A stretch of DNA of 64,000 nt from IMGVR_UViG_3300042564_002819:62001-126000; one strand, 5' to 3'. Positions 1,917-56,240 are shown, counted from the stretch's first letter. Made by a program: numbers and translations. Notes: generated by a model from the sequence alone, not told the origin.

Positions 1917-1930
1917 TTATAAATCCTATA

Positions 1931-5042: not shown

Positions 5043-5050
5043 GTTAATAC

Positions 5051-10432: not shown

Positions 10433-10435
10433 AAA

Positions 10436-11962
10436 TCACCAATTGTAACGAGAATCTAGAAATATGCTAGCAAATTCCGGAAATGTGTCAATAAAGTTTG
10501 TGCCGCGACGCTGATCGTGTTGCAATACATATTTTACAAAATTTATTTTATTTATATGCATTTCGTTGGGTGAAATATTTGACCTATCTCGAAAAATATC
10601 TAAATTTCTTTCTGCTTTTGCTATTTCAAAATCGTAAAATCCTGCAAAGTTAGATACGTCGGAATTTTTTTTCATAAAGTCAATTCCTTCTTCAAGGTAT
10701 GAAGAAAATTCTAACGGAAGCACATTCATGTTTTGCCATGCAGGATTTCTTAAAATAGGAATGTCAAACCAAATTCTTTGTCTGGGATGAATTTCGTAAT
10801 CCGGATGAGTATAATACGGATCATATATTGGTATGAATTGTATGCCCTGCTTGTCTTTGCTAAATTCCGTTCTTAAATCGAGTATATATTGTAAGTAATC
10901 CTTAAATTTAGGAAAACTTAATGCATTAAATGTATTAATAAATGTAACTGTAGTATTCTTAGTTTCATTTAAAAATCTACTAACGTTTTCTTGCATATAA
11001 GAATAGTTTAAACCTGTACGAATATACTCCGCTTGGGTTCCTACCGAGTCAACACTTACAAATAATGCAAGATTTTTTAGTGCCATATTTACATACCAAT
11101 GATTGTTAGCACCCGGGTTAAAGCGTTCTTTGTCTTCCCATATTTGTATTTCCTCGAGTTTCTTAATTTTTTCTATAAACTTGTCCATTAACTCAGGCTT
11201 TGGAGGAGAAAAATTACTAGTGATACTTAACTCTAACCAAGTGTTAGGATTTTCATATATGTAATCTAAAACTTTAAAAGTATTTGCATCCATAAGAGGC
11301 TCACCGCCTGTAATTCTAAACACTTCTAATTTTTTATATAACTCAGGCCACCATTTCCAAAAAGCAGATATATAAGGATTTTCCGATTGTTTTGATTTTA
11401 AAGGCATTAACCCTGCAGATGCAAGGGCATCTAAATTGTTATGCCCAACTTCATTATTGTTAATATCTAAAATTTTAAACTCGCCTAACTTTTTAACTTC
11501 GTCTTCCCACTCAGTGCTTAAATGCGGAGAACAATACATGCATTTTAAATTACATGCTTGATTAAAGTTAACTTCCATATATCTAGGATTTATGTTACTA
11601 GTGTCAAGAGAATCTATAATATCACTGCGAGAATTTTGTGCCCAATATTCTCCTGATCGATATATCCTGTCACTTCTATTTCCAGAATCTTCAATTTTCC
11701 AGCAATACGAGCATCCTGCCGGTCTTTCGCCTTTGAGCATTAAAGATCGTTCTGCTTTTTTTTCTTGTGTATTATGAAGAGCACTAGGATTTTTTTCTAT
11801 TTCAGGAATACTTATTTTATGTAACGGCGGATGATAGCAGCTATGTGTTGTTCCATTGGTTAAGTGCATCGACACTTGTGCCCATTTAGCATAACACATT
11901 GTTTTACTTATTTTTTTAAGTTGATTTTCGGCTATATCTGCAGATTGGTTATAATCACTCAT
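10436..11962 (-). CDS. Radical SAM protein with N-terminal Twitch domain (CxAKW/HSCYHP subtype)
   Basis: CYAKW...HSCYHP...CSYCW, then CNLKCMYC and TGGEP. Confidence 0.9.
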   Translation of the reverse strand: MSDYNQSADIAENQLKKISKTMCYAKWAQVSMHLTNGTTHSCYHPPLHKISIPEIEKNPSALHNTQEKKAERSLMLKGERPAGCSYCWKIEDSGNRSDRIYRSGEYWAQNSRSDIIDSLDTSNINPRYMEVNFNQACNLKCMYCSPHLSTEWEDEVKKLGEFKILDINNNEVGHNNLDALASAGLMPLKSKQSENPYISAFWKWWPELYKKLEVFRITGGEPLMDANTFKVLDYIYENPNTWLELSITSNFSPPKPELMDKFIEKIKKLEEIQIWEDKERFNPGANNHWYVNMALKNLALFVSVDSVGTQAEYIRTGLNYSYMQENVSRFLNETKNTTVTFINTFNALSFPKFKDYLQYILDLRTEFSKDKQGIQFIPIYDPYYTHPDYEIHPRQRIWFDIPILRNPAWQNMNVLPLEFSSYLEEGIDFMKKNSDVSNFAGFYDFEIAKAERNLDIFRDRSNISPNEMHINKINFVKYVLQHDQRRGTNFIDTFPEFASIFLDSRYNW

Positions 11963-11980: not shown

Positions 11981-12008
11981 ATTATAACTAATTTATTAAA
12001 AATGTCAA
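11981..12008 (-). promoter_or_regulatory. Sigma70-type promoter TTGACA-N16-TATAAT
   Basis: Perfect consensus hexamers on the minus strand (-35 at 12008-12003, -10 at 11986-11981), followed by SD AAGGA and ATG at 11962. Confidence 0.8.
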
Positions 12009-12850
12009 GCGTTAGGGTATTTTTCTTTAATAAAATTTGCTAGTTCTTCTGCTATTACTTTATATCCATCAACATTAGGATGAATACAATTGGTTAAATG
12101 TTTCTTTGGATAATCTAAATTGCTGTAATGGTTATAGTATTGCGGCTGCATTTCATCTGAAAGCCAGTTATCTTTTCTAACTAATAATTCTACAAATGTC
12201 TTATAATCTCTAAAATTGTGTATATAACATGACCAATCTACTTTATTTGCTAATTTGTCGCAATGCTCATATAAAAAGTCTTTGCCACGGTCATCAAATG
12301 CGTTTGCTAAAACAAATTTTAAATTGTTGGCTTTACAAAAAGTTTGCACTTCTAAAATATTACATAAAGTTTCGATTGCAGTTGCATCCTCGGCATAAAC
12401 TTGTCTTGTGTATATATCCCATAATTTACTGTTGCCTAGGTGCGGCCACACTGTTTGAAAATTATAATGACCTGCATCTTTAGTATCACTTTTATAACAA
12501 ATTTTAGTATTTTTCCAAGAATCTCTAAAAAAATCAAATCGTTCATACCCACTCATCATGAACACTACAATTCCGTTTTCAACTTTTGAAAAATCTATAT
12601 TTGTAAGATACAGACTTCTTGCACTGCCTCTATTTCCTATGCCGCGTTGTCCGAGATTGTAAGGAATGTATTCTGACAAATAATCTCTACATAATACATT
12701 AACCCAACTATTTCTGTGTTCGTGTTCTATAAGATGATAACTTTTGTGCATTGGAAGATTAATTTTTCCATTGTATTCTTTCCAGATCTCTTCTGGATAA
12801 CCGCCTTCGCCTTGTGTCCAACTACATCCTAAGCCAAATAAAACATTCAT
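12005..12850 (-). CDS. SGNH/GDSL-hydrolase-like protein (possible O-acyl transferase/esterase)
   Basis: Block I-like GCSWTQG, NLGQRGIGN, and C-terminal IHPN..GYK.IA. Confidence 0.6.
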   Translation of the reverse strand: MNVLFGLGCSWTQGEGGYPEEIWKEYNGKINLPMHKSYHLIEHEHRNSWVNVLCRDYLSEYIPYNLGQRGIGNRGSARSLYLTNIDFSKVENGIVVFMMSGYERFDFFRDSWKNTKICYKSDTKDAGHYNFQTVWPHLGNSKLWDIYTRQVYAEDATAIETLCNILEVQTFCKANNLKFVLANAFDDRGKDFLYEHCDKLANKVDWSCYIHNFRDYKTFVELLVRKDNWLSDEMQPQYYNHYSNLDYPKKHLTNCIHPNVDGYKVIAEELANFIKEKYPNA

Positions 12851-13890
12851 TATCTAAAATCCTCGTATTTGTCATCACGTACAGTATCTAATGTAACACA
12901 GTGTGGGCCACCGCTTAATGTTCTTGCATGTCGCATTTGTACTGGCATTACATCAAAACCACGTGACTCTAATTGTTTGATTAAAGGAATTTGATTTTTT
13001 TCAACTGCAACTAAATTTTCGCTAATACTTAGCACATTCATACTTAACCAAGGACTTGCAGGAGCCCAGTGATCTATAAATGGTGTAGGAATTGGATCTT
13101 CTGCCCAAATTTTATCCCAAGATTTAAAATAGGCAGGAATGTTATTATTGTTAACTCTGCTCGGATTTAACAATACCTTTCCTGGAGCCAAAGGTAATAT
13201 TGTTGTATCGACATGAACATAAGCATATATGTTATCCATAATATGTACATTATATTTTTCACCCAATGTTGATTGTAACCATTGAGATCCTAATTTATTA
13301 CCAGAATTTGAAACAAGATAAAAAATGTCTCGACCGCATTTAATAACGTTGGCTGCGTCGAACGCAATTTCGTATTCGGTTAAAGTAGGTTTAGACAAAT
13401 CTGATCTGTCATAAAGGTCATCTAACAGTTCAGGTTTTGGAGCAGATATCCATCTGCTACCTTTAGAAAAGTATTCCTTAAAAAGTTTTCTATAACCTAA
13501 GGTTTCAAAGTATCTAGATCTTAACGGCATCGGAGTTTCTATTAGCATATCTCCAATTACTAAAACACTATCTCTAGGACAATACATGTAGTATCCATCA
13601 GACGTCCAGTCCGGTGTTGCACATAGCAACCCTAAGTTTTTTATTTCAGGACGATGAACTGTAACATTAACAGATTCTAATTGTTTTTGAAATGCATCTA
13701 AATCTTCTACAGTTTCGTCTATAACTTGTTCAGGGTATTTTCCTGCTGGCAATCCGGAAACTGTATCGTAATTTGCATAGTCAACACAATGAATGTCATG
13801 TTTTTTTGTTTTAGGTATTTGTGCATTTTCTGCCCGACCTAATATTACTTCTTTTAGAGTTCCCCATTCTGTGTTCGAGTTAACTTTCAT
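12850..13890 (-). CDS. Amidinotransferase (glycine / inosamine-phosphate amidinotransferase family)
   Basis: VNSNTEWGTLKEVILG, YCPRD, and catalytic-type FDAAN (Asp), HVDTT (His), GGPHC (Cys). Confidence 0.9.
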   Translation of the reverse strand: MKVNSNTEWGTLKEVILGRAENAQIPKTKKHDIHCVDYANYDTVSGLPAGKYPEQVIDETVEDLDAFQKQLESVNVTVHRPEIKNLGLLCATPDWTSDGYYMYCPRDSVLVIGDMLIETPMPLRSRYFETLGYRKLFKEYFSKGSRWISAPKPELLDDLYDRSDLSKPTLTEYEIAFDAANVIKCGRDIFYLVSNSGNKLGSQWLQSTLGEKYNVHIMDNIYAYVHVDTTILPLAPGKVLLNPSRVNNNNIPAYFKSWDKIWAEDPIPTPFIDHWAPASPWLSMNVLSISENLVAVEKNQIPLIKQLESRGFDVMPVQMRHARTLSGGPHCVTLDTVRDDKYEDFR

Positions 13891-14536
13891 ATATTCTGTA
13901 AGGCCAAAAGACCTTTTGCTCCTTTAAATCTTTATAGGTTAAGTTACTGCCGGTATCTGGATTTTCATCAGGTAGATTTTCTAAAAGTAATAATCCCGAA
14001 GCTGCTTCTTCCGGAGTCATGTACATGTGATAACCAATACATTCATAATCGTCCTCGTCGTGCTTAACGTATTTGTGACGACCATCGTAAATCATTGGTC
14101 TGCACCAATTTATAAAATCATAATCGTCGGTTAAAATGACACCACCTTTTCCTATTTTAAGAGTTTTTCTATGATGGAAACTAACACAGTAATAAGAACC
14201 TTTTACATACATGCCTCTTTTAAACCTAGTAGCACCATCTATAATAGGGGTAGGTTCTAAGTAATATTCTCCACTCCATTCTTTTTCAACAAATTTAATC
14301 CTATTTCCTGCATGTATTATTTGCATAGGTGTACTTGCGTAAGTATGCGAAGGTATGCTAATTATTTGATTTTTTATGCCTAAGTATTTCATACAAAGAA
14401 ACATAGCATTTGAACAACTGTCAACACAAACAGCGTATTTTGATCCTGCATATTCTGCTAATTTGTTTTCAAAAAGTGTTACTGCATCCCAAGGATCGTT
14501 AATTTCATATCCTTTATTTTTCAGTTGGGATATCAT
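13880..14536 (-). CDS. Short DegT/DnrJ/EryC1/StrS-family PLP aminotransferase
   Basis: FENKLAEYAGSKYAVCVDSCSNA, IIDGA, SFHHRKTLKIGKGG. Likely start ATG 14536 after GGGGA (ORF track starts at 14608). Confidence 0.8.
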   Translation of the reverse strand: MISQLKNKGYEINDPWDAVTLFENKLAEYAGSKYAVCVDSCSNAMFLCMKYLGIKNQIISIPSHTYASTPMQIIHAGNRIKFVEKEWSGEYYLEPTPIIDGATRFKRGMYVKGSYYCVSFHHRKTLKIGKGGVILTDDYDFINWCRPMIYDGRHKYVKHDEDDYECIGYHMYMTPEEAASGLLLLENLPDENPDTGSNLTYKDLKEQKVFWPYRIYES

Positions 14537-15254
14537 AAGGTTCCCCTGTTTCTTCGTCAAACCAATAAAGGCTTCTATGAGGCAAGTCTTTTGAATCGTA
14601 TGCTGCATTGCTTACATAAAAGAAAAGTCTAAATGCATTTCTTGTTATTCCTTCAGGGCATGTTAACGGATCTGGAAATCCATGAAATCCTTTTTTATGG
14701 TGTCTCCATAATACTGCTCTGTTGAATAGCGGAGGTACTCTTTGTATTATATTTTTATTTTGAAAATCATTAAACTGTAAGTGGCCGCCCCACTCATCTT
14801 TCCAGTCACTATTTAAATATATAATAAACGAAAGCATACGATGAACTTTCATTGTATCGTTCCAATTAAAGTCAGTATGTATTTTTAACGACGACCCGGT
14901 TTTAATTTTGCTATATCCGGCTCCAACTAAGTAAGGGTCCGGAATTAAATCTTTAATCCCAGTTATTTCTGTAAGCCATTTCATAAATTGTTGACTATGA
15001 AACTGATTTACAAAATTTTCTGCTACAGGTGCAACATCCATGTTTATACATTCTTTCATGCTGCTACCGCGTCTAGTAAATTCTGTCCAATAATAATCTG
15101 GAATATTATTGCATTCTTTTTCTAAATCGTAGGCTAACTCTAGTGGAAGAAAGTCGTCAAGCACAATCATAGGAAATGGAGGAGTGCCTACAAATGTGTC
15201 ATTTAATTTTTTAGTATTGTTAAATTTTGTTCTAACGTGATCGATTAATTTCAT
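14514..15254 (-). CDS. 2OG-Fe(II) oxygenase
   Basis: PFPMIVLDDFL, HTD (HxD), YLN..W..EWGG.L, distal HGF and Arg. Confidence 0.85.
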   Translation of the reverse strand: MKLIDHVRTKFNNTKKLNDTFVGTPPFPMIVLDDFLPLELAYDLEKECNNIPDYYWTEFTRRGSSMKECINMDVAPVAENFVNQFHSQQFMKWLTEITGIKDLIPDPYLVGAGYSKIKTGSSLKIHTDFNWNDTMKVHRMLSFIIYLNSDWKDEWGGHLQFNDFQNKNIIQRVPPLFNRAVLWRHHKKGFHGFPDPLTCPEGITRNAFRLFFYVSNAAYDSKDLPHRSLYWFDEETGEPYDIPTEK

Positions 15255-15267
15255 CTTAGTACTTTCT

Positions 15268-16506
15268 TTAATATGCGTTGTTAAACCAATGGTCAGGTGG
15301 ATTATTTAATAATAAATTATCAAAATCTTTATTAAATTTTTTGTATGTTATACCCGACTTTATATTAGCTAGTCTATTCATAACAACATTATAATTATGA
15401 GTTGTTTCAGGAATAGTTTTGTAAATAATTTTTTTAAATTCGTTGTCGGACATTCTGTTAAGATGATCTACTTGGTTATGAATATGATAAATTCTTTCCC
15501 ACGCTGTATTTAGTGTATCGTATGATTCATCAAAAACATTAGAAAATGTCTTAAACCCATGTTGACGTGTACGAGATAAATGATTTTCTGTTGCATATAC
15601 AAAAAATGGATGTCTATACATCATAGATTTATAAGTTTTTTCTGTACATTGAAAATGAGATGAGATGTCATAGTTGTTTGTTTCTACTAATAAACTCATA
15701 GCAGAATTTATAAATGCATCTTGAAGTGTATTAGAAATAAATTGTTGCCCTGGCGGTATTTCTTTAGACTCATTTTCTAAGAGACACGGCATAGATCTTA
15801 CAATTTCTGTTTTTTCGTCGTTCCAGTATTCGTTTAATTCATTTCCCCAGATAGGATTTTTTGCAGATATATCAGCTATGCTATTTTTAAAAATAGTATC
15901 AATTTCTTCTAAAGAATAGTATTGGCGAGGTTCTATTCTATTATCAGCATATATATTTTTAACATTAAAAAATGAATAATAAGAATTGTTTAATATTCCT
16001 CGGCGTCGTAAATCAACAAATGATACAAGTCTTGTGTTATGCCAATTTCTACTTAAAAATAGAAAACGTTTTTTAAATTTTTTAGTTAAAAATTCATGTA
16101 ATACAATTAGTAAAGGTCCCGGTACTATAGCAAAATTTATGTTTGTTTTTATTATACTTTTTATTAAATCTACATCATGCTCAGAATGAGCCATTACTAG
16201 TATCTTTTCTTCAGAAATTTGATTTATTTCTATCCATTTTTTTAATTTTTCAATAGTGTAAATTGACGTGCCATCAGAGAAATTTACTAAAAATAATGCA
16301 TTTAATTTTTTAAATCTTTCGTCATTAAACAACGAATCATTGGCTACTTTATGTTCTTCTAAATAAACAACCTTTTTTAAAGAACTCGAATCTTTAACAA
16401 ATTTTTTAAAATCGTATATTATTTCTACTTTTTCCATGTCAAAGTGTCGCTGAAACGGAGGAGTTGCCTCCGAAGCTAACACTGTATAGAATAAGTATTC
16501 TTTCAT
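15268..16506 (-). CDS. Hypothetical protein of the EKT-motif family (putative GT10-like glycosyltransferase)
   Basis: VET...CTEKTYK...HPFF...GFKTF...DESYD shared with three other genes in the cluster. Confidence 0.55.
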   Translation of the reverse strand: MKEYLFYTVLASEATPPFQRHFDMEKVEIIYDFKKFVKDSSSLKKVVYLEEHKVANDSLFNDERFKKLNALFLVNFSDGTSIYTIEKLKKWIEINQISEEKILVMAHSEHDVDLIKSIIKTNINFAIVPGPLLIVLHEFLTKKFKKRFLFLSRNWHNTRLVSFVDLRRRGILNNSYYSFFNVKNIYADNRIEPRQYYSLEEIDTIFKNSIADISAKNPIWGNELNEYWNDEKTEIVRSMPCLLENESKEIPPGQQFISNTLQDAFINSAMSLLVETNNYDISSHFQCTEKTYKSMMYRHPFFVYATENHLSRTRQHGFKTFSNVFDESYDTLNTAWERIYHIHNQVDHLNRMSDNEFKKIIYKTIPETTHNYNVVMNRLANIKSGITYKKFNKDFDNLLLNNPPDHWFNNAY

Positions 16507-17678
16507 TTTCTTGTATTTCCATAATGTATTGTATAATAATTATTGCACGGTGCAATATGTCTCCATGGATCTATCACTGTGCAACCTTCGGGCCACAATA
16601 TGTTTTCAACCCATTCTTCCCAATACCCGATTAAATAAACATCTGCGATAGGAAAAATAGTATCTCCTGTGTTTGGATCATAATACTGCACTGTACCACC
16701 GTGCTTTTCAATATAATGTCCTGTTAACATACTCGACGAGCCTATAGTATAAGAAACTCCCGGTTTATAAGCTTTGCCTACAATGCATACATTGTTTCCA
16801 ACAGTTAAACAACGTTTAGCTATATTTTCTGCTTGAATCTCTCTTGCTGTCATAATAGAATCAAAAAGATCATAACCTAAATCAAGTTTTTCAGCAAGAT
16901 ATCTAAGAGCAATGTTGTCTCTAGGATGACAAGCACCTCCGTCGCCCATTCCTGCTTTCATATATCCAGGGCCCATAATCCTGCGTGTTGACTTTGTTAA
17001 TGCATCTGTGACTATATCTACATTGATGTTACCGTTGCGTTCAGCAACATCCTGTATCATATTAACTAACCCTAATTTTGCAGAAATAAAAGTATTATAA
17101 AAAATCTTAATACTTTCTGCTTCATCCCATGTTCCTACTTCATATCTAGGATTATTTTCCATTATAGGTTTATAAAATTCAATTAATTCTTGTGCGTCAG
17201 TTGTTAGACTGCCATCTTTGGTACCGATAATAACCATTTCAGGATTTATCATATCCCATTTTACAGTACCCATTGCTATTAAATACGGATTATATATAAA
17301 TCTTGCATTGTTTATTAAATCTATAAAATGCGTTCTAACAGTTCCTGGTAAAACTGTGCTTATTAACACTACTAGTTGAGATTTGTTAACATATCTATTA
17401 ACTTCTGTTAATACTTCTTTAACTATAGTATAGTCAAAGTCTTTATTAGGTAAATGACTAGTCGGAGTTTCGCCGCCGTATTCAGATTCATGCGGGGTAG
17501 GAACAGCAATAAAAATTATATCACGATCTGCAACTGCTTCTTTAATAGTCGATGCCATATTGAAATTTTTAGGAGATCTTGTTTCAATGTCATATCCTAT
17601 TACATTGTAAAATTCGGCTATTACTTCGGCACAATCTTGTCCGAGCTTGCCACATCCTATCATTGCTACGTTCTTCAT
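16503..17678 (-). CDS. UDP-glucose/GDP-mannose dehydrogenase family protein (atypical)
   Basis: GCGKLG, AVPTP, STVLPGT, KIFYNTF, GGACHPRD (catalytic Cys), GKAYKP. Confidence 0.88.
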   Translation of the reverse strand: MKNVAMIGCGKLGQDCAEVIAEFYNVIGYDIETRSPKNFNMASTIKEAVADRDIIFIAVPTPHESEYGGETPTSHLPNKDFDYTIVKEVLTEVNRYVNKSQLVVLISTVLPGTVRTHFIDLINNARFIYNPYLIAMGTVKWDMINPEMVIIGTKDGSLTTDAQELIEFYKPIMENNPRYEVGTWDEAESIKIFYNTFISAKLGLVNMIQDVAERNGNINVDIVTDALTKSTRRIMGPGYMKAGMGDGGACHPRDNIALRYLAEKLDLGYDLFDSIMTAREIQAENIAKRCLTVGNNVCIVGKAYKPGVSYTIGSSSMLTGHYIEKHGGTVQYYDPNTGDTIFPIADVYLIGYWEEWVENILWPEGCTVIDPWRHIAPCNNYYTIHYGNTRK

Positions 17679-19738
17679 TTTTGTTCCTCGTTTATGTTAG
17701 TGTTTAAAATACAAAAATACTTGTTTAATCTTCCGTGATCAGTAAGTGGTGCCGGTTGAATTTTTTTGAGACAGTTTTTTATTTCACTAGGTATAAAACT
17801 TCTATCGTTAATTATTTTTAGAAAATTTCGATAATTAAATTCTATTTTTGGTTTTAACAAATCATATACTTCTCTGAAGTTAGTTATTTTACTAACTGTT
17901 TCTATATTTTTTACATATAAATGAGCACGCTCATCTATATCAGCTACATCATCGAAGGTATAATCTATTATTTCGTCGTACAAAACAAATCCTAACTTTT
18001 GTAAATACTTATTAAAATGCATCGACGAAAGTGTTACAAACGGTTTTTCTAAAATAATAGGCGTTATAGTTTTTTCACTAATCATTATTGTTTCATGTGA
18101 GCATTCTGTAACAAAATCAAATAAACTTTCGTGGTACTGATGCGGAAGTAAAAACGAGTCAAGTTTTGTATCAAAATCGTCATCAATTTTTTTAACAGTA
18201 TTATCAAAATATTTAAATTCAAAATTAGAATTTTCTTTTAAAAAGTTATGCCAAGTTACAATTCCTTTATCAAATAAATTATATTTCGAAATGTAATCTA
18301 TTGTATAGCATCGATGTAAGTGCCCACGATTATTAAAACACACAAACGGATACAAAAAATTCTTATTGTTTTTTAATTCTTTTATATTACGAGGTTTTAA
18401 TACTGATAAAGTATAATTAAACCAATATGTAGGATAATGTTTTAATTTAAAATTTTTAATGCCAAAACTATTTACTAGATCTGTAAGATATTTGGATTCA
18501 GGTGCACCTGTAATCCAAATAACACTAACATTATAGGAATTTACTACGTCAACAAATTCTTTAGTAACCCAAGGGTGCCATTCGTTTTCTCCATAGATCG
18601 TAACTAATTCAGGTTTTGTATTTTTAATACTTTGAATTAAATTGTCATAGTTAAAGTTATGCCACAAGTCTGCTTCGAGCTCGTAAACTTTGTGTTTATA
18701 GTGATCTATATTAATATTATAAATTTTAAACTTAGAAAAAAACTCTAAAAGTTCTCTGTTATATTCGCTTACTTGAGTTTGTTTTTTAAGATTAATATTA
18801 ACAAATGTTTTTACAATCTTAGGAACATAGTTGTCTGATTTTGTTATATCCAATGCTAGACTTTTATTGTAATCAATTTTCTCTTTTATTTTATTATATA
18901 AGTCATTCAAGTTATTTTTTTGATCAATAACGTTAGTTACATTTACCATTAACTTTTGTATGCGTTTTTCAACATCGGGTTCTGAATCGAACGAATAATC
19001 AAAAATTTCGTCATATAGTTTAAATCCTAGATCTTCAAGATTTTTATGATAGTACTGAGACCCAAGAGTTAATGTAGGTAATCCACATAAGATAGGATTA
19101 GCAGTTTTTTCAGACAAAAGAAATGTATCAGTAGTAGTTTCTGTTGGAATATGCAAAAAAGATTCCAAAAAAGTTTTATTAAAATGATAACTAGAAAAAT
19201 GATTTTCAAACCCGTCTCCGGATAGTAATATCTCCCCTGTATAATATTTCCAATTTTCTTTTAACTCGTTATTAGGAATTTGCTGGTACGATACTATGCC
19301 TTTATCAAGATAGTTATTTTTTGCTAATTCATCTATCCATTGTGTTCTATGAAGTCGAGTACGACCATTAAACGTTAAAAAAGGATTTACAAAATTAAAT
19401 TTGTAATTTTCAATATTATTAAAAAGATCATTATTTTTTTCAAGTTCTTTAGCAGTTTTTAAAAACCAAAACGTCGGCCATGTAATAACTTTTTTTATTA
19501 AATCCTTATTAATTCCGGTCTTAAGTACATTAGAAAAAAGCCATTTTTTGTCTTTTACACAAACTACAACAGTTATTGTAATTAAATTTTCATTGATATA
19601 ATCAACTATTTTTTTTGTTAGATTTAATTCATATTCGTGCATATAAAAAAAATTTATATGTTTTAAATTTTTTATTTTTATATAGTTGTATAATTCGTCA
19701 TCGACAAATTCCCATGCATAAATTGTATTATCGATCAT
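17675..19738 (-). CDS. Two-domain EKT-motif protein (putative glycosyltransferase, internal duplication)
   Basis: Both halves contain PF..FN.R..LHR, DKGIV, SEKT..PI and LGF.LYDEI.DY.FD. Confidence 0.55.
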   Translation of the reverse strand: MIDNTIYAWEFVDDELYNYIKIKNLKHINFFYMHEYELNLTKKIVDYINENLITITVVVCVKDKKWLFSNVLKTGINKDLIKKVITWPTFWFLKTAKELEKNNDLFNNIENYKFNFVNPFLTFNGRTRLHRTQWIDELAKNNYLDKGIVSYQQIPNNELKENWKYYTGEILLSGDGFENHFSSYHFNKTFLESFLHIPTETTTDTFLLSEKTANPILCGLPTLTLGSQYYHKNLEDLGFKLYDEIFDYSFDSEPDVEKRIQKLMVNVTNVIDQKNNLNDLYNKIKEKIDYNKSLALDITKSDNYVPKIVKTFVNINLKKQTQVSEYNRELLEFFSKFKIYNINIDHYKHKVYELEADLWHNFNYDNLIQSIKNTKPELVTIYGENEWHPWVTKEFVDVVNSYNVSVIWITGAPESKYLTDLVNSFGIKNFKLKHYPTYWFNYTLSVLKPRNIKELKNNKNFLYPFVCFNNRGHLHRCYTIDYISKYNLFDKGIVTWHNFLKENSNFEFKYFDNTVKKIDDDFDTKLDSFLLPHQYHESLFDFVTECSHETIMISEKTITPIILEKPFVTLSSMHFNKYLQKLGFVLYDEIIDYTFDDVADIDERAHLYVKNIETVSKITNFREVYDLLKPKIEFNYRNFLKIINDRSFIPSEIKNCLKKIQPAPLTDHGRLNKYFCILNTNINEEQK

Positions 19739-21653
19739 TTACTTTTGTTATCCACGATTTTCCAAAATTTCGCCGTCTAGCAAAAAATATTTGTTCACAA
19801 AACTTTTGTAGACTAATATCTTTATCCTCAGGAAAATCAAATTTGTATCTTACTTTATTTTTTAAAATTTCGTTAGATTGTATGTATCCTATAAAGTCAA
19901 AGTCAAAATTTAAAATCTTTGGATAGTGTGTTGTTTGAGAATAGTCAATAATATAATTTCTTTGCAATTGTATTAATTGATCCGAGAGTTCTTTATCTAA
20001 GTCGAAATTTTCTTTTAAAAATTTATCTATTAAATCAAATACATGTTGACTTTTATTTTCGCTATGAATATTAATTATGGTACTGTGAATCAAATTCCAA
20101 CCATGTATTTCAATTCCTTGAATAGGAACATGATTTATTAAACCGTAATCTGACCAATTTTTATAATGTTTTCTAATTCTATTAATTTCAGAATTAAGCC
20201 AAGGATCTTGTTTTATATAATCAAAAAGCTTTTCATAAAAATCTTCGTACAAAACATTTGAATGCTTATAAAGAAATCTGCTAATATAATTAGTTATACC
20301 GTTGATGTGAAAGGTATTCATAAACCAACTAAAAACTTGAGCATCTAGCATTGTTTCTATTGGTAAATCTTTAGTAGAAATTACAACTTCTACTCCTTCT
20401 TTTAATTCATTTTCATTATATGTTCCAACAAGATAATCGTAAACAATTCTACCTTTTAAATTGTACTCTTCTCTTTGTACCAGATTCATTTCAGCATTTT
20501 CAAGAAGCTGTGCTTGATAGATTGTTATTCCTGTGTGATTTCCTGCTCTATATAGTTTATAAAAGTTGTCTTTCCAAGATTTTAGTGTTTCGCCAGGTAG
20601 GCCTAGAATTAATTCTGTGTACAGAGGAATGTTGCTTTCTTCGCAAAGTTCAAAAACTTCTTCAATTTTGTTTGTATCGAGATTTTTTCTTTTTATGATT
20701 TCAAGAACATTTTCATCCATAGTTTGTACACTTAGATTTAACCCTATCTTAGCACCGCCATCATAGATTAATTTTTTAACAATATCAACTATTTCTTTTT
20801 TTTGATTTTTTGCCCAGCTTATTGTATAAGCTTTTGGATTATTATAGGTTTTTTGAACTTCTATTAATTTGTCGGCTATTAACGAATCTCTGTCTGGAAA
20901 TATTCCAAAATTGGCATCGGTTATACTAACAAAATCGCATCGATTTTCGCCGATCCATTCGAGCTCCTTGTAAACCCTTTCAAGGTCAAACTTTTTAACT
21001 TTGTTGTATGTTAAACTACCCCAGTCACAGAATGTACAAGCATACGGACAGCCTCTATTAGTTTCTAAAGTTGCGTTCCATGTTATCTCAGGATACTTTT
21101 TCATTAAGTTGTCAAATATCCCAATTAAATAAGGACTAGGAATTTCGTCTAATTCATTTATTCTTAAACTCGGCCCTGTGTCAATTGTTTTATTATCAAC
21201 ATTAACTAAGAGTCCTGGTATTTTTAATATTTCTTCTTTGCTGCTAGCTTCTAACAACTTCTTAAAAGATATTTCGCCTTCTTGTTTAAAACAAACGTCA
21301 ATATAAGGATAAATTTCAAAAAAATTAGGATTTTCAATTGACGGTTCAGGCCCGCCGAACAATATCATTATATCAGGATTTATTTTTTTTAGTTCTCTTG
21401 CTAAAACATTATTATAGCTTTTATTCCATATATAAGTGCTAAATCCTACTATAGAAGAATCTTTTAACTGTTCAACTGCTTCTTCTATAGGGTCTCTTCT
21501 CCAAATAAAGTCACCCAAGTAATAATTATTTTTTATACTTTCAAATTGTTGTGCATATGCCCATACAACCGCAGGACTGTATGGAAGATAATATGCATTA
21601 AATTCCTTAGGACCTTGCTGAAAGTTCGGGCTTACAAAACTTACTTTTTTCAT
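19728..21653 (-). CDS. Cobalamin-binding radical SAM protein (class B methyltransferase-like)
   Basis: N-terminal B12-binding-type VGFSTYIWN...LFGGPEP...EGE; ETNRGCPYACTFCDWG; DANFG; ILGLPGET. Confidence 0.88.
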   Translation of the reverse strand: MKKVSFVSPNFQQGPKEFNAYYLPYSPAVVWAYAQQFESIKNNYYLGDFIWRRDPIEEAVEQLKDSSIVGFSTYIWNKSYNNVLARELKKINPDIMILFGGPEPSIENPNFFEIYPYIDVCFKQEGEISFKKLLEASSKEEILKIPGLLVNVDNKTIDTGPSLRINELDEIPSPYLIGIFDNLMKKYPEITWNATLETNRGCPYACTFCDWGSLTYNKVKKFDLERVYKELEWIGENRCDFVSITDANFGIFPDRDSLIADKLIEVQKTYNNPKAYTISWAKNQKKEIVDIVKKLIYDGGAKIGLNLSVQTMDENVLEIIKRKNLDTNKIEEVFELCEESNIPLYTELILGLPGETLKSWKDNFYKLYRAGNHTGITIYQAQLLENAEMNLVQREEYNLKGRIVYDYLVGTYNENELKEGVEVVISTKDLPIETMLDAQVFSWFMNTFHINGITNYISRFLYKHSNVLYEDFYEKLFDYIKQDPWLNSEINRIRKHYKNWSDYGLINHVPIQGIEIHGWNLIHSTIINIHSENKSQHVFDLIDKFLKENFDLDKELSDQLIQLQRNYIIDYSQTTHYPKILNFDFDFIGYIQSNEILKNKVRYKFDFPEDKDISLQKFCEQIFFARRRNFGKSWITKVNDR

Positions 21654-22912
21654 CGTTGTTTATATTTTCCTGAAAATATTTCTTCTACAGTATTAAACAA
21701 TCTTTTGTGAGATTCATATACATAATCATGTTGCATATAATTTAGTTGATTTTGTTTTACCATTTTTAATGATTCTCTAATAAAAGACTCTTTGTGTTTT
21801 CTACTTGTATTTACCCACTTGGTCAACGACTCATGTGCTGCATAAAATCTATCAACTGGACTTTGAATATCATCATACGATTGATCTAACCCAGGAAAGT
21901 CTGTTTGATAGCCCATACTTCTTAATTCTTTTAAAATATTGTATTGTCCTAGAATTATAAACGGATGACCGGCAACAATCGGTTTAAATGTTTTTTCAGT
22001 AATAAACATTCCCGGTTGTTGAAATGCTGTTTCTGTTACAAAACTTAATAAACTATTTTTATAAATAGAATGATTAAAAATTGTTTCGTTGTTAAAGTCT
22101 GGATTTTCTACTGTAAAATCTTTGTCAACAATTAACGGTAAGTTTTTTGTTAACGTATTTTTATATTGATCATCATCTATATTTAACACTGTACTCGGAG
22201 GTACTTGAGTACTATTAGGATCATTACGATAATTACCGCTTACTAATCCATGTTGTGCAAGATTTTTTGTAATCAAATAATACAAATGATCAATTCTATG
22301 ATTTCTAGCTGTTCTATTTAAACTATTAAAGTCTTTTGAGTCCGATGACTTTAAAGCATCAAGTATCAATGGTTGCTTTGGAATGCGATCTTGAAAATAG
22401 AAAAATCCTGTTAAAAAGTATACATGTGCAACACTTTGTTTCTGTCTATTATTAATACACCATTGCTCGTATTGACTTGAGAACCATGAATTATTGTCTA
22501 CTAATATCACGCTGTATCTAGGAAGATGTAAATTTTTTATTGCCTCATGAAGTTCAAAAAATCCATCAACTAATCCGTTAATTGTTTCTCTAATTAAAGG
22601 AAACCCTTCTGACTGATTGTCAATGACTATAAGAACTTTTCCTTTTCTAGCTGCCTGAATAACGTCTAAAGGTATTTCATATAATACATGTCTAGGAGGA
22701 CCGTAGCGTTCTTTTCCAGACCAAGTTTCAGCATAACATCTTACACTAACAAGATATATACCCGGATTATCGTATTCATTTGTTTCTGCAATTTCAAAAC
22801 CTGCTTGCTTAAAAGAATGAAATGCGTTAGTATTGTCAAACGTAAGAGGGTGCGGTCCATCTGATAATTCATGCAAGTTGCTATGATTTAGGTCGTCGAC
22901 ATAGAATCTCAT
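21650..22912 (-). CDS. EKT-motif protein (putative GT10-like glycosyltransferase)
   Basis: FNSLNRTARNHR, VTET...FITEKTFKPI...HPFIILG...DQSYD. Confidence 0.55.
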   Translation of the reverse strand: MRFYVDDLNHSNLHELSDGPHPLTFDNTNAFHSFKQAGFEIAETNEYDNPGIYLVSVRCYAETWSGKERYGPPRHVLYEIPLDVIQAARKGKVLIVIDNQSEGFPLIRETINGLVDGFFELHEAIKNLHLPRYSVILVDNNSWFSSQYEQWCINNRQKQSVAHVYFLTGFFYFQDRIPKQPLILDALKSSDSKDFNSLNRTARNHRIDHLYYLITKNLAQHGLVSGNYRNDPNSTQVPPSTVLNIDDDQYKNTLTKNLPLIVDKDFTVENPDFNNETIFNHSIYKNSLLSFVTETAFQQPGMFITEKTFKPIVAGHPFIILGQYNILKELRSMGYQTDFPGLDQSYDDIQSPVDRFYAAHESLTKWVNTSRKHKESFIRESLKMVKQNQLNYMQHDYVYESHKRLFNTVEEIFSGKYKQR

Positions 22913-23874
22913 TATTTACTTTTTTCTATTTGTTCAAGTATCCACTTGTAAGTTTTTAACAATCCGTTTTCTAAATTATCCGGAGGAGACCAATTTAGTT
23001 GTTCTTTGATTAACTGATTATGACTTGTTCTTCCTGCTACTCCTATAGGACCGTCAACGTTTTTTATTTGTATATTTTTGTTTGTTAGTCTTCCTACTAG
23101 CATTGCTAACTCGTTAATGGAAATCATTCTTTCGCTACCTAAGTTTAAAGGAAGACTGTAATCTCCGTCTACAATTTTTTTAATTCCAACAATACATTCA
23201 TCTATATACAAATAACTACGAGTTTGTGTTCCTGGGCCCCATACTTCGATCTCTCCTGTTTCTGTTTCAGCAACTTTTCTACATATTGCAGCAGGAGACT
23301 TTTCTTTGCCACCAGTCCAAGAACTTTCTGGACCAAAGACATTATGAAATCTTGCTATTCGAACACGTATTCCATAGTTTTTAGCAAATGACAAAAACAA
23401 ACGCTCACTAAACAACTTTTCCCAGCCGTATTCGGAATCAGGATTTGCAGGATATGCACTGTCTTCACTTAAAAGAGGATTGGACGGATCTGCTTGATTA
23501 TGTTCAGGATACATGCAGGCACTGCTAGAATAAAAAATTCTGTTAACTCCCTTTTCTACCATTTCTCTAAGTATATTAAGATTAATTATAGAACTATTAT
23601 ACATAATATTTGCATCGTTGTCGCCTGTAAATATGTATCCAGCACCACCCATATCGGCTGCAAGTTGATAAATTTCATATAAATCGCTTGTAACTATCTT
23701 ACTTACATGTTCTTGATTTCTTAAATCAGCTATATGAAATTCGTCGGCAGTTGTTTGAGAAAATTCAGGATATCTTAAATCTACTCCTATTACATAAAAA
23801 CCTTGACTTTTTAAATCATTGACTAAGTGTACACCGATAAACCCGCCTGCACCGCAGACTAAAACTTTTTTCAT
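22912..23874 (-). CDS. NAD-dependent epimerase, GDP-mannose 3,5-epimerase-like
   Basis: GAGGFIG, LAADMGGAGYI, SSACMYP, YGWEK, RFHNVFGP, GGKEKSPAAICRK and QTRS closely follow the GME signature. Confidence 0.88.
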   Translation of the reverse strand: MKKVLVCGAGGFIGVHLVNDLKSQGFYVIGVDLRYPEFSQTTADEFHIADLRNQEHVSKIVTSDLYEIYQLAADMGGAGYIFTGDNDANIMYNSSIINLNILREMVEKGVNRIFYSSSACMYPEHNQADPSNPLLSEDSAYPANPDSEYGWEKLFSERLFLSFAKNYGIRVRIARFHNVFGPESSWTGGKEKSPAAICRKVAETETGEIEVWGPGTQTRSYLYIDECIVGIKKIVDGDYSLPLNLGSERMISINELAMLVGRLTNKNIQIKNVDGPIGVAGRTSHNQLIKEQLNWSPPDNLENGLLKTYKWILEQIEKSK

Positions 23875-38965: not shown

Positions 38966-38975
38966 TATTTATTTA
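38966..38975 (-). promoter_or_regulatory. Late promoter-like TAAATAAATA
   Basis: Overlaps the stop of the giant gene, about 18 nt upstream of ATG 38948. Confidence 0.5.
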
Positions 38976-56217: not shown

Positions 56218-56240
56218 TAGCACTTCCTCAGTTTATGTTA

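What the first reader, a model, noticed from the sequence alone, without database searches (positions are those of the whole stretch)
12850..15254. Aminoglycoside-like logic: oxygenase - DegT aminotransferase - amidinotransferase run suggests a guanidino-sugar
Seen: three overlapping genes encoding a 2OG-Fe(II) oxygenase, a DegT-type aminotransferase and an amidinotransferase with an intact Asp/His/Cys set. Known: streptidine is made by oxidation, a DegT-family transaminase (StsC) and an amidinotransferase (StrB1); Twitch radical SAMs (BtrN, NeoN, HygY, SpeY) and B12 radical SAMs (GenK, GenD1) tailor aminoglycoside sugars. Inference: this phage has analogues of each step (keto-sugar to amino-sugar to guanidino-sugar), giving a cationic glycan or even a diffusible aminoglycoside-like product.
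Basis: partly seen in the sequence, partly recalled or inferred. Interest (0 to 1): 0.78.

Follow-up and report, generated by a model that had tools for sequence, protein, structure and literature searches.

The report
Phage amidinotransferase sugar-tailoring gene module
A large freshwater phage carries three tightly packed genes (an iron oxygenase, a stripped-down sugar aminotransferase and a streptomycin-type amidinotransferase) that recur together in many phages inside sugar-building clusters, so they probably put a positively charged guanidino group on a phage-made sugar, though no product has been seen.

Summary
On the minus strand, 14514-15254 encodes a 2OG-Fe(II) oxygenase. 13880-14536 encodes a DegT-family aminotransferase of only 218 aa. 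12850-13890 encodes an amidinotransferase that aligns end to end with StrB1 (E 2.6e-101) and keeps all five catalytic residues. The genes overlap by 23 and 11 nt and are under strong purifying selection (dN/dS 0.04-0.10).

The linkage is real and specific to phages. The short DegT lies within 10 kb of the amidinotransferase in 24 of 53 dereplicated viral loci, in many arrangements, but in only 1 of 80 cellular loci. The surrounding genes are sugar genes: an NDP-sugar dehydrogenase, an SDR, three copies of a virus-only GT-B (GT10-like) family, an SGNH/DUF6071 protein, and radical SAM enzymes.

I found no cyclitol-forming enzyme, kinase, exporter or resistance gene. Cellular homologues at the same ~45% identity as StrB1 sit in amino-acid/NRPS-like clusters, so homology does not fix the acceptor.

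The best reading is a phage glycan-tailoring module that turns a DegT-made amino sugar into a guanidino sugar. This is plausible but unproven (confidence about 0.4). Papers on the cultured phages S-SCSM2R and CP220 have noted similar genes, without experiments.

The parts
14514..15254 (-). 2OG-Fe(II) oxygenase, P4H-like (246 aa)
   Evidence: Pfam PF13640 at 6.1e-15 and PF13661 at 6.5e-11. H126, D128, H191, R205 and R209 are conserved. It lies directly upstream of the short DegT in the window's clade, including loci that lack the amidinotransferase.
13880..14536 (-). Short DegT-family PLP aminotransferase (218 aa; the ORF extends to 14608 but the supported start is 14536)
   Evidence: PF01041 at 1.8e-21. 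It lacks about 44 internal residues and the C-terminal domain of solved DegT enzymes. D100, S119, F120 and K124 are invariant. The AF2 model has pLDDT 91.6, and the top 50 Foldseek PDB hits are all NDP-sugar aminotransferases or dehydratases at about 1e-11.
12850..13890 (-). StrB1-like L-arginine amidinotransferase (346 aa)
   Evidence: PDB phmmer hit to 1bwd at 2.6e-101 with a near-gapless full-length alignment. The catalytic residues D107, D178, H226, D228 and C331 are invariant. It belongs to a viral clade with no cellular homologue above 49% identity.
12005..12850 (-). SGNH/GDSL-like (DUF6071-like) protein (281 aa), start overlapping the amidinotransferase stop by 1 nt
   Evidence: N-terminal GCSWTQGEGG motif. 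Atlas feature scores are 0.95-0.98 and TM 0.66-0.71 to viral DUF6071/Lipase_GDSL clusters. DUF6071 genes follow the amidinotransferase in L004.
15268..16506 (-). Member of a virus-only ~420-aa family ('F1'), probable GT-B glycosyltransferase, GT10-like
   Evidence: F1 is present in 30 of 53 amidinotransferase loci, the commonest neighbour. Atlas shows only viral clusters. VIA-align ranks FUT9 alpha1,3-fucosyltransferase first at Z 9.0, and the other hits are nearly all GT-B enzymes. The family consensus contains ...NS....VTET...F.TEK..KPI....
16503..17678 (-). NDP-sugar 6-dehydrogenase (UDP-glucose/ManNAc dehydrogenase family)
   Evidence: PF03721 at 2.3e-17 and PF00984 at 1.1e-16. NCBIfam TIGR03026 at 1.4e-43. 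It is present in 16 of 53 amidinotransferase loci and is often adjacent.
17675..19738 (-). F1 paralogue (687 aa)
   Evidence: It falls in the same blastp family as 15268-16506.
19728..21653 (-). B12-binding radical SAM enzyme (probable methyltransferase)
   Evidence: PF04055 at 1.2e-15 and PF02310 at 1.5e-9. The best NCBIfam match is the KedN5 family at 8e-72, below its cutoff. In L004 and L016 it is inserted between the DegT and the amidinotransferase.
21650..22912 (-). F1 paralogue (420 aa)
   Evidence: Same blastp family.
22912..23874 (-). NAD-dependent SDR epimerase/dehydratase
   Evidence: PF01370 at 1.5e-37. NCBIfam matches are Fcl/GalE/LegB-like. The SDR family is the commonest neighbour of the short DegT in phages generally.
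10436..11962 (-). N-terminal-twitch radical SAM protein (508 aa), preceded by a perfect sigma-70 consensus at 12008..11981
   Evidence: NCBIfam NF033640 N_Twi_rSAM at 1.7e-92, 310.6 bits against a cutoff of 170. Promoter-like site matching 12 of 12 positions. The family is present in 22 of 53 amidinotransferase loci.

Best explanation
The three genes belong to one translationally coupled, phage-specific glycan-tailoring operon that runs at least from about 23.9 kb down to 12.0 kb on the minus strand.

Shown: the enzymes are intact, conserved and co-inherited. The aminotransferase is a minimal version of the NDP-sugar aminotransferases. The amidinotransferase has the complete StrB1/AGAT catalytic apparatus. 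The neighbours are nucleotide-sugar and probable glycosyltransferase genes.

Inferred: a host UDP-sugar is oxidised. One possible route is the NDP-sugar dehydrogenase plus the SDR. Another is that the 2OG oxygenase, which takes the place next to the DegT that an SDR holds in most other phages, makes the keto group. The short DegT then converts the keto group to an amine. The amidinotransferase moves the amidino group of L-arginine, through its Cys331 thio-uronium intermediate, onto that amine and releases ornithine. The result would be a permanently cationic guanidino sugar.

The F1 glycosyltransferase paralogues would then build this sugar into an oligosaccharide on a phage or cell-envelope target, with further methylation (B12 radical SAM enzyme), radical SAM tailoring and SGNH-type (de)acylation. 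The gene run is followed, after about 8 kb of further biosynthetic-type and unassigned genes, by the tail-fibre and baseplate genes.
For: The genes are real and under selection. The gene run is tightly overlapping.

Linkage:
- The short DegT lies within 10 kb of the amidinotransferase in 24 of 53 dereplicated viral loci, at offsets of -646, -2490 (with a B12 radical SAM gene inserted), -1290 on the opposite strand, +1728, +4524, -604, -1080 and -2717, among others.
- DegT-linked amidinotransferases fall in several well-supported clades.
- The identities of the two proteins to the window co-vary, r = 0.87, n = 25.
- Only 1 of 80 cellular loci has the pair.
- The short DegT has at least 592 viral matches, out of the 2.9 million contigs that the tool states the collection holds. 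A 45% co-occurrence is therefore a very large enrichment.

Sugar context:
- The short DegT's best structural matches are all NDP-sugar aminotransferases: GDP-perosamine synthase, ArnB, WbpE, DesV.
- Its commonest neighbour in phages is an SDR, within 10 kb in 37 of 50 loci and directly adjacent in 13.
- In one viral cluster of 177 members it is fused to a GT1 glycosyltransferase and a methyltransferase.
- Amidinotransferase loci also carry an NDP-sugar dehydrogenase (16 of 53), F1 GT-B-like genes (30 of 53), and GT25 and GT7 genes.

The same gene set occurs in the cultured cyanophage S-SCSM2R, in the order GT-GT-GT-shortDegT-rSAM-GT-oxygenase-amidinotransferase-GT2. In Campylobacter phage CP220 the amidinotransferase lies among radical SAM genes and two nucleotide-diphospho-sugar transferases.

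An oxygenase of one of two families lies within the ±10-kb locus in up to 27 of the 53 loci, often directly adjacent: family f5 in 16 and family f8 in 11.
Against: No product, substrate or expression data exist, and no RNA run was listed. No amidinotransferase is known (from my own knowledge) to use a nucleotide sugar or a glycan amine as acceptor.

Cellular homologues at the same ~43-47% identity sit next to NRPS-like, SbnA/SbnB-like, ATP-grasp and kynurenine-pathway genes. The family therefore readily uses amino-acid-type acceptors.

About half of the viral amidinotransferase loci have no short DegT within 10 kb, and some lie among ordinary replication genes. Only 9 of the 80 best short-DegT loci have an amidinotransferase. 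The two enzymes do not therefore depend strictly on each other.

The short DegT lacks the C-terminal domain that helps bind substrate in solved enzymes.

P4H-like 2OG oxygenases usually hydroxylate proteins or small molecules, so a keto-forming role is speculative. The F1 glycosyltransferase assignment rests on Z of about 8-9, which the tool rates as borderline.
Confidence: 0.4

Rival explanations
1. The amidinotransferase makes a guanidino amino acid or amine, as its cellular relatives probably do (for example from glycine, lysine, diaminopropionate or a polyamine). That compound is then either a free metabolite or an aglycone or side chain that the glycosyltransferases and radical SAM enzymes work on. 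Under this reading the DegT amine is not the acceptor.
For: Cellular homologues at 43-47% identity lie beside NRPS-like AMP-binding/PCP proteins, SbnA/SbnB-like genes, or class-III aminotransferase/ATP-grasp ligase/MFS genes. About half of the viral loci lack the short DegT. The characterised relatives AGAT, SxtG and HsvA all score well.
Against: The phage loci contain no NRPS, ATP-grasp or amino-acid-pathway genes among those scanned. The enzyme is embedded in, and translationally coupled to, sugar genes. It aligns with StrB1 with a single one-residue gap, whereas the alignments to SxtG and HsvA need several insertions.
Confidence: 0.25
2. The cluster hypermodifies phage DNA. A glycan or an amine-bearing group is attached to a modified base and then amidinated, which protects the genome from host nucleases.
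For: Phage glycosyltransferases are known to decorate DNA with diverse glycans (Pyle et al. 2024, as cited in PMC12619734). T4 beta-glucosyltransferase is among the structural matches of F1, at Z 7.9. Campylobacter phages that carry the amidinotransferase/radical SAM module are known, from my own knowledge, to have unusual DNA.
Against: No base-hydroxymethylase, DNA-base kinase or transglycosylase was found among the ORFs scanned in the window or in the related loci. The cluster lies about 8 kb from the tail-fibre genes. The rest of the 330-kb genome could not be inspected.
Confidence: 0.12
3. One reading: the phage makes a diffusible aminoglycoside-like (aminocyclitol) antibiotic by a streptidine-type route.
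For: StrB1 is the best solved match. A glutamine--scyllo-inositol transaminase is among the best sequence matches of the DegT N-terminus. The S-SCSM2R paper labels the homologues 'antibiotic synthesis genes' from annotation alone (PMC12801897).
Against: No myo-inositol-phosphate synthase, 2-deoxy-scyllo-inosose synthase, inositol dehydrogenase, kinase, phosphatase, exporter or resistance gene was found among the window ORFs scanned. StrB1 is no closer (about 45% identity) than cellular homologues from non-aminoglycoside clusters. A lytic jumbo phage has little time or obvious need for a secreted antibiotic.
Confidence: 0.05
4. The oxygenase, and possibly the amidinotransferase, act on a protein rather than a sugar. 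The P4H-like enzyme hydroxylates Pro or Lys of a virion protein to create the glycan attachment site, and the amidinotransferase modifies the glycan or a side chain afterwards.
For: PF13640 is the prolyl-4-hydroxylase-type family, and the nearest solved sequences are prolyl hydroxylases. There is a weak NCBIfam match to a peptide-modifying oxygenase, YhhC. A distant amidinotransferase homologue and a nearby 2OG oxygenase of S-SCSM2R were detected in purified virions (PMC12801897). The tail-fibre genes lie about 8 kb beyond the run.
Against: The oxygenase sits directly upstream of the short DegT even in loci without the amidinotransferase. This suggests a shared small-molecule pathway. No AGAT-family enzyme is known to act on proteins.
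Confidence: 0.15

Closest known systems
StrB1, scyllo-inosamine-4-phosphate amidinotransferase of Streptomyces griseus (PDB 1bwd)
   Same: Same length (346 vs 348 aa). The alignment is near-gapless over the full length, at 342 bits. The Asp/Asp/His/Asp/Cys catalytic set is the same. The score is clearly higher than for the glycine-type enzymes.
   Different: Identity is only about 45% (counted from the alignment). There are no cyclitol, kinase or phosphatase genes nearby. The window enzyme belongs to a clade found only in viral contigs. The acceptor is unknown.
Nucleotide-sugar aminotransferases of the DegT/DnrJ/EryC1/StrS family (GDP-perosamine synthase, ArnB, WbpE, DesV)
   Same: The fold of the PLP-binding large domain, the SFxxxK Schiff-base lysine and the cofactor aspartate are shared, as is a genomic partnership with an SDR or dehydrogenase.
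   Different: The phage protein is 195-218 aa instead of about 360-400. It is missing an internal segment of about 44 aa and the whole C-terminal domain. This short form occurs almost only in viruses.
Known routes to amino sugars from uronic acids (WbpA-WbpB-WbpE for UDP-GlcNAc3NA; ArnA-ArnB for UDP-Ara4N) and the acetamidino sugars of O-antigens and flagellin glycans (from my own knowledge)
   Same: The logic is the same: an NDP-sugar dehydrogenase, then an oxidising step, then a DegT aminotransferase, then N-tailoring that gives a cationic amidine-type group. WbpE and ArnB are among the best structural matches.
   Different: Known cationic N-groups are acetamidino groups made by PP-loop amidotransferases. 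They are not guanidino groups made by an arginine-dependent amidinotransferase. None of the pathway steps is demonstrated here.
Gene sets already noted in cultured phages: Synechococcus phage S-SCSM2R ORF305-309, and the radical SAM/amidinotransferase module of Campylobacter phages CP220 and CPt10
   Same: The families are the same: short DegT, radical SAM, small oxygenase, amidinotransferase and glycosyltransferases. Both were described in print (PMC12801897, PMC2853527).
   Different: The amidinotransferases are only 41% and 32% identical to the window's. CP220 lacks the short DegT. The papers offer only annotation-level ideas ('antibiotic synthesis', 'metabolic advantage').
Oxygenase-then-aminotransferase pairs in antibiotic tailoring (LipL/LipO for 5'-amino-5'-deoxyuridine; KanJ/KanK in kanamycin), from my own knowledge
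   Same: In both, a 2OG-Fe(II) oxygenase creates or removes a carbonyl or amine on a sugar-like substrate next to a PLP or redox partner.
   Different: Those oxygenases belong to other 2OG subfamilies. Here the role is inferred only from gene adjacency.

Membership tests
Amidinotransferase family (AGAT/StrB1; pentein superfamily) | Full-length sequence homology to solved members | tested here: met
   1bwd at 2.6e-101 over residues 4-343; SxtG, HsvA and AGAT at 1e-60 to 1e-66. The Pfam model PF02274 does not reach threshold.
Amidinotransferase family (AGAT/StrB1; pentein superfamily) | Catalytic Cys-His-Asp triad plus the two guanidinium-binding Asp residues | tested here: met
   C331, H226, D178, D107 and D228 are invariant in 10 diverse homologues. 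In the alignment they pair with the StrB1 residues numbered one higher.
Amidinotransferase family (AGAT/StrB1; pentein superfamily) | L-arginine as donor, with ornithine released | not testable with these tools
   Needs an enzyme assay.
Inosamine-phosphate amidinotransferase / streptidine (aminoglycoside) pathway | Companion genes for cyclitol formation and handling (inositol-phosphate or 2-deoxy-scyllo-inosose synthase, inositol dehydrogenase, kinase, phosphatase) | tested here: not met
   None was found by Pfam, NCBIfam or PHROGs among the window ORFs of 100 aa or more that were scanned (the 4603-aa ORF and plus-strand ORFs were not), nor in the precomputed annotation of L003-L006. Several ORFs remain unassigned.
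Inosamine-phosphate amidinotransferase / streptidine (aminoglycoside) pathway | Orthology to StrB1 rather than mere family membership | tested here: inconclusive
   StrB1 is the best solved hit. However, identity is about 45%, no higher than to cellular homologues from unrelated clusters. StrB1 itself could not be placed in the tree.
DegT/DnrJ/EryC1/StrS sugar aminotransferases | Pfam PF01041 above the gathering score | tested here: met
   77.3 bits against a cutoff of 19.8.
DegT/DnrJ/EryC1/StrS sugar aminotransferases | PLP Schiff-base lysine and the cofactor-binding aspartate | tested here: met
   K124 in SFHHRK aligns with the lysine of SFHPRK in 9bgp, which is alanine in the otherwise identical entry 9bgr. 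D100 and K124 are invariant in 18-19 family members.
DegT/DnrJ/EryC1/StrS sugar aminotransferases | Two-domain architecture of about 360-400 aa with a C-terminal small domain | tested here: not met
   The protein is 218 aa. The alignments cover about 215-235 columns of targets about 365 residues long, and an internal segment of about 44 residues is absent.
DegT/DnrJ/EryC1/StrS sugar aminotransferases | Fold of the large PLP domain | tested here: met
   AF2 pLDDT is 91.6. Foldseek gives E about 1e-11 and TMq 0.6-0.68 to 50 sugar aminotransferase or dehydratase chains.
2OG-Fe(II) oxygenases (P4H-like, PF13640) | Pfam score above the cutoff and the HxD...H iron triad with a 2OG-binding Arg | tested here: met
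   56.4 bits against a cutoff of 27. H126 and D128 are invariant, H191 is nearly invariant, and R205 and R209 are invariant.
GT-B glycosyltransferases (GT10-like) for the F1 neighbour family | Two-Rossmann GT-B fold and donor-binding motif | tested here: inconclusive
   Model pLDDT is 71.9. Foldseek E-values are 5e-3 or weaker, but the hits are nearly all GT-B enzymes. VIA-align gives Z 9.0 to FUT9 and Z 8.0 to the H. pylori and plant FucTs, which the tool rates as borderline. Pfam gives no hit for any of 25 members.

The most novel reading that the evidence does not exclude
Phages have evolved a pathway that cells apparently lack. In it, a minimal single-domain sugar aminotransferase and a StrB1-type amidinotransferase together convert a nucleotide sugar into a guanidino sugar, which virus-only GT-B transferases then build into a glycan on the virion or the infected cell envelope. 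To my knowledge, this would be the first natural guanidino-glycan and the first amidinotransferase known to act on a sugar nucleotide or glycan.
Probability: 0.3. Interest if true: 0.8.

Novelty: new variant of a known kind. Interest (0 to 1): 0.58.

Why it matters
If the module makes a guanidino sugar, that would add a new chemical group to natural glycans. A permanently cationic, arginine-like sugar would change charge, receptor binding and resistance to glycosidases. It would also extend the amidinotransferase family to a new class of acceptor.

The module is not a curiosity of one genome. Relatives of the amidinotransferase occur in at least 116 viral contig stretches, and 3027 proteins match at E of 1e-10 or better. 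The short aminotransferase occurs in at least 592 viral stretches. The window itself is found near-identically in many lake-water metagenomes.

Two cultured phages carry versions of the module: S-SCSM2R on Synechococcus and CP220 on Campylobacter. The hypothesis can therefore be tested at the bench.

Apart from the pathway, the single-domain DegT is itself an interesting minimal PLP enzyme. The finding also corrects the published 'antibiotic synthesis gene' label, which rests only on name transfer.

Tried and rejected
- **Nucleotide search.** blastn of the region against 50,697 phage records found nothing.
- **Unassigned neighbours.** PHROGs gave nothing useful for ten of them. Pfam gave nothing for any of 25 F1 members.
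- **F1 profile against PDB.** The only hit was a low-complexity chance match to beta-hemolysin, which I rejected.
- **Other window ORFs against PDB.** phmmer of the 857-aa and 438-aa ORFs found nothing.
- **tRNAs.** None were found that could hint at the host.
- **Nearest isolates.** A search with a baseplate-region protein gave only about 24% identity to jumbo phages PA5oct and Atu_ph07.
- **Promoter and terminator scan.** The totals are no better than shuffled sequence. Only the single perfect promoter consensus at 12008..11981 is worth noting.
- **Expression.** No RNA sequencing run was listed.
- **Tree against named enzymes.** I relied on PDB scores instead. The tree is rooted on the very long CP220 branch, so its root is unreliable.
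- **Streptomyces homologue.** I checked whether L164 marks a streptomycin cluster. It does not: the neighbours are a class-III aminotransferase, tryptophan dioxygenase, kynureninase and an ATP-grasp ligase.
- **S-SCSM2R ORF267.** I checked whether this oxygenase belongs to the window oxygenase family. It does not appear to (hhalign probability 1.9%).
- **Structure prediction.** I left that sequence out entirely rather than altering it. Two further attempts were deferred by the tool and succeeded later.
- **Creatine/guanidinoacetate reading.** The 'auxiliary metabolism' idea found in ocean-virome literature (PMC11360552) was considered. It does not fit the operon context.

Full report
**What is in the window.** The 64-kb window is AT-rich (about 32% G+C), and every sizeable ORF is on the minus strand.
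- From 32 to 64 kb it encodes myovirus tail-fibre and baseplate proteins: gp25-like, gp53-like, a spike with an M15 peptidase, a tail-collar fibre, and a 4603-aa ORF.
- From 0.5 to 31 kb it encodes a long run of biosynthetic genes: at least seven radical SAM enzymes, a PP-loop ATPase, an NDP-sugar dehydrogenase, an SDR, and many unassigned ORFs.
- The same sequence sits on a 330-kb viral contig. It is found near-identically in many lake-water metagenomes.
- Its structural genes are only distantly like those of the jumbo phages PA5oct and Atu_ph07.

**Checking the observation.** The three reported genes are real.
- *Oxygenase, 14514-15254.* It passes Pfam PF13640 (56.4 bits against a cutoff of 27). 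It keeps H126, D128 and H191, plus two arginines, across 11 homologues.
- *DegT-like gene.* It passes PF01041 (77.3 bits against 19.8). The listed ORF reaches 14608, but the ATG at 14536 is the supported start. It has a Shine-Dalgarno-like AGGGGA upstream, and relatives begin with the same residues. The protein is then only 218 aa. Against solved DegT enzymes it aligns in two blocks, lacks about 44 internal residues and has no C-terminal domain. The cofactor aspartate (D100) and the Schiff-base lysine (K124, in SFHHRK) are nevertheless invariant.
- *Amidinotransferase, 12850-13890.* It gets no Pfam hit but matches StrB1 (1bwd) at E 2.6e-101 over its full length with a single one-residue gap. 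That is well ahead of SxtG, HsvA and AGAT. I count about 45% identity in that alignment. D107, D178, H226, D228 and C331 are invariant.
- *Packing and selection.* The genes overlap by 23, 11 and 1 nt and sit in a tightly packed run from at least 23.9 kb to 12.0 kb. All three have dN/dS of 0.04-0.10 against relatives with dS near 1.

- A profile scan of viral contigs returned 80 loci with amidinotransferases 39-100% identical to the window's.
- After dereplication to 53 loci, the short DegT lies within 10 kb in 24 of them. The spacings and orientations vary widely. They include a B12 radical SAM gene inserted between the two genes, and the DegT on the opposite strand.
- DegT-linked amidinotransferases occupy several well-supported clades.
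- The two proteins' identities to the window co-vary (Pearson 0.87, n = 25).
- In one representative genome for each of 185,579 bacterial and archaeal species, the best homologue is only 49% identical. Just 1 of 80 cellular loci has the short DegT. That locus is a Pseudobdellovibrionaceae MAG contig that also has an F1-like gene between the two, so it looks like the phage module.
- The pairing is therefore a phage trait.
- The reverse scan is sobering. The short DegT occurs in at least 592 viral stretches, and only 9 of the best 80 loci have an amidinotransferase nearby. The amidinotransferase is thus an optional addition to a much commoner phage aminotransferase pathway.

**What kind of pathway is it?**
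- The short DegT model is confident (pLDDT 91.6). Its 50 best PDB matches are all nucleotide-sugar aminotransferases or the related dehydratases, among them GDP-perosamine synthase, ArnB, WbpE and DesV.
- In phages its commonest neighbour is an SDR, within 10 kb in 37 of 50 loci and adjacent in 13.
- One large viral cluster fuses it to a GT1 glycosyltransferase and a methyltransferase.
- The commonest neighbour of the amidinotransferase (30 of 53 loci) is a virus-only family of about 420 aa. I call it F1, and it has three paralogues in the window. Where the DegT is missing, F1 often lies directly downstream of the amidinotransferase.
- F1 has no Pfam or PHROG match. Its model nevertheless aligns almost only with GT-B glycosyltransferases. 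Human FUT9 ranks first (Z 9.0) and two other GT10 fucosyltransferases score Z 8.0. The family consensus carries an F.TEK motif that recalls GT10. These scores are borderline by the tool's own notes.
- Other recurrent neighbours are an NDP-sugar dehydrogenase (16 of 53), N-terminal-twitch radical SAM proteins (22 of 53), a B12 radical SAM enzyme (15 of 53), GT25 and GT7 transferases, a carbamoyltransferase, and SGNH/DUF6071 proteins.
- An oxygenase lies within the ±10-kb locus in up to 27 of the 53 loci (families counted separately), often directly adjacent to the amidinotransferase. It is either the P4H-like family of the window or a small cupin with HxD...H...RYTLQITG.
- In the window's DegT clade the P4H-like oxygenase sits directly upstream of the DegT even where the amidinotransferase is absent (L171-L173). 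This is the position an SDR holds beside the DegT in most other phages.

**What the homology does and does not say.**
- StrB1 is the closest solved enzyme, and the phage protein aligns with it almost without gaps.
- Cellular homologues that are just as similar have different company. In soil Alphaproteobacteria and Verrucomicrobia they sit next to an NRPS-like AMP-binding/PCP/hexapeptide protein and SbnA/SbnB-like genes. In a Streptomyces they sit next to a class-III aminotransferase, tryptophan dioxygenase, kynureninase, an ATP-grasp ligase and an MFS exporter.
- This branch of the family therefore uses varied acceptors, and the name 'inosamine amidinotransferase' carries no weight for the phage enzyme.
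- No cyclitol-forming enzyme, inositol dehydrogenase, kinase, phosphatase, exporter or resistance gene was found in the window or its close relatives. I therefore reject the streptidine/aminoglycoside and diffusible-antibiotic parts of the interpretation.

**Most likely mechanism.**
- *Shown.* The module is an intact, co-inherited, phage-specific set of an oxygenase, a minimal sugar-type PLP aminotransferase and a catalytically complete amidinotransferase. It is embedded among nucleotide-sugar and probable glycosyltransferase genes.
- *Inferred.* A host UDP-sugar is oxidised, either by the dehydrogenase and SDR or by the 2OG oxygenase. The short DegT aminates it. The amidinotransferase then transfers the amidino group of L-arginine, through the Cys331 covalent intermediate, onto the new amine to give a guanidino sugar. 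The F1 transferases incorporate this sugar into a glycan, and radical SAM, B12-methyl and SGNH enzymes tailor it further.
- *Unknown.* The target is not established: virion proteins, the infected cell envelope, or DNA. Tail-fibre genes lie about 8 kb beyond the run. In S-SCSM2R a distant amidinotransferase homologue was detected in purified virions (PMC12801897). These two facts lean towards a virion or envelope glycan.
- I give the guanidino-sugar reading a confidence of about 0.4.

**Rival readings.**
- An amino-acid- or polyamine-type acceptor, as in the cellular relatives: 0.25.
- Action of the oxygenase on a protein attachment site: 0.15. This partly overlaps the main reading.
- DNA hypermodification: 0.12.
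- A diffusible aminoglycoside: 0.05.

**Relation to what is known.**
- The gene set has been noticed twice. The 2010 description of CP220 and CPt10 reported an interchangeable module of five radical SAM genes plus a putative glycine amidinotransferase (PMC2853527).
- The 2025 description of S-SCSM2R listed the short DegT (annotated as an AHBA synthase), a radical SAM gene and the 'inosamine amidinotransferase' as 'antibiotic synthesis genes' never before seen in cyanophages (PMC12801897).
- Neither paper tested a function, connected the two phages, or noted how widespread the module is.
- A full-text search for guanidino sugars found no natural example.
- I rate the finding as a new variant of known kinds. 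It comprises a phage-only clade of StrB1-like amidinotransferases coupled to a phage-only single-domain DegT.

**Limits.**
- Only the 64-kb window and ±10 kb around homologues were visible.
- Gene families in the related loci were defined by my own ORF calls and blastp clustering.
- The neighbour counts depend on a 50% query-coverage tblastn threshold, so divergent homologues are undercounted.
- The tree's root is unreliable.
- No expression data were available.

Noticed in passing
window 549-6130 (- strand): This looks like a tandem duplication of a gene pair. An N-terminal SPASM/twitch radical SAM gene (549-1916, 455 aa) is followed by a ~350-aa radical SAM gene (1931-2980), and the same pair recurs at 3627-5042 and 5051-6130. 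A 217-aa PP-loop ATPase with a weak QueC/NAD-synthase match (2977-3630) lies between the pairs. In these proteins the SPASM-like domain precedes the radical SAM core, which is the unusual order. By blastp clustering, the ~350-aa radical SAM family is shared with Campylobacter phage CP220.
   Followed up: partly
window 38969-52780 (- strand): A single 4603-aa ORF lies between the tail-fibre and baseplate genes, followed by an 1147-aa ORF (52780-56223). Neither was characterised.
   Followed up: no
window 12008-11981 (- strand): A perfect sigma-70 consensus (TTGACA, 16 nt, TATAAT) sits in the 42-nt gap between the SGNH-like gene and the N-twitch radical SAM gene. It is the only 12-of-12 match in 20 kb, although the total number of promoter-like sites is no higher than in shuffled sequence.
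   Followed up: no
viral contigs generally; e.g. L184, L186, L195 (DegT at 10001-10621, SDR about 690 nt downstream of its start): The single-domain DegT of 195-238 aa is a large, almost exclusively viral family, with at least 592 stretches in IMG/VR. It is usually paired with an SDR. In one cluster of 177 members it is fused to a GT1 glycosyltransferase and a methyltransferase in an 866-aa protein. How a DegT enzyme works without its C-terminal domain is unexplained.
   Followed up: partly
L017 and L020, about 5-11 kb: These viral contigs carry two amidinotransferase copies in opposite orientation. They flank a small cupin oxygenase, a B12 radical SAM gene, the short DegT and the P4H-like oxygenase.
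   Followed up: no
L092 8048-11026 (Pseudobdellovibrionaceae MAG contig, 171 kb): This is the only 'cellular' locus with the phage-type arrangement of short DegT, F1-like gene and amidinotransferase. It could be a prophage, a mis-binned phage contig or a gene transfer.
   Followed up: no
L129 and L093 (soil Alphaproteobacteria / Verrucomicrobia), L164 (Streptomyces): Cellular StrB1-like amidinotransferases are widespread in soil MAGs. They lie next to a large AMP-binding/PCP/hexapeptide/TraX protein and SbnA/SbnB-like genes. In the Streptomyces they lie next to a class-III aminotransferase, tryptophan dioxygenase, kynureninase, an ATP-grasp ligase and an MFS gene. These look like uncharacterised pathways for guanidino amino-acid products.
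   Followed up: partly
L167 8354-9932 (Synechococcus phage S-SCSM2R ORF266-267): S-SCSM2R has a second, very divergent amidinotransferase-like gene. It is 22% identical to the window's and keeps the GGxHC motif. It is followed directly by a 2OG oxygenase and lies next to KdsA/KdsB. The paper reports the ORF266 protein in purified virions.
   Followed up: partly
L044, L045, L056, L058-L060, L063, L066 (jumbo viral contigs of 229-288 kb): In one amidinotransferase clade without the DegT, the gene is preceded by an APS-kinase-like P-loop protein and has a HAD-like phosphatase nearby. This loosely recalls the phosphorylate/amidinate/dephosphorylate order of streptidine synthesis. The other neighbours there are ordinary phage genes, such as ferredoxin and HNH.
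   Followed up: no
window 12000-16600: The region is present at 50-100% of sampled words in at least 14 lake-water metagenome runs from different studies, and in two riverine runs. The phage is therefore a widespread freshwater one, and its host was not identified.
   Followed up: no
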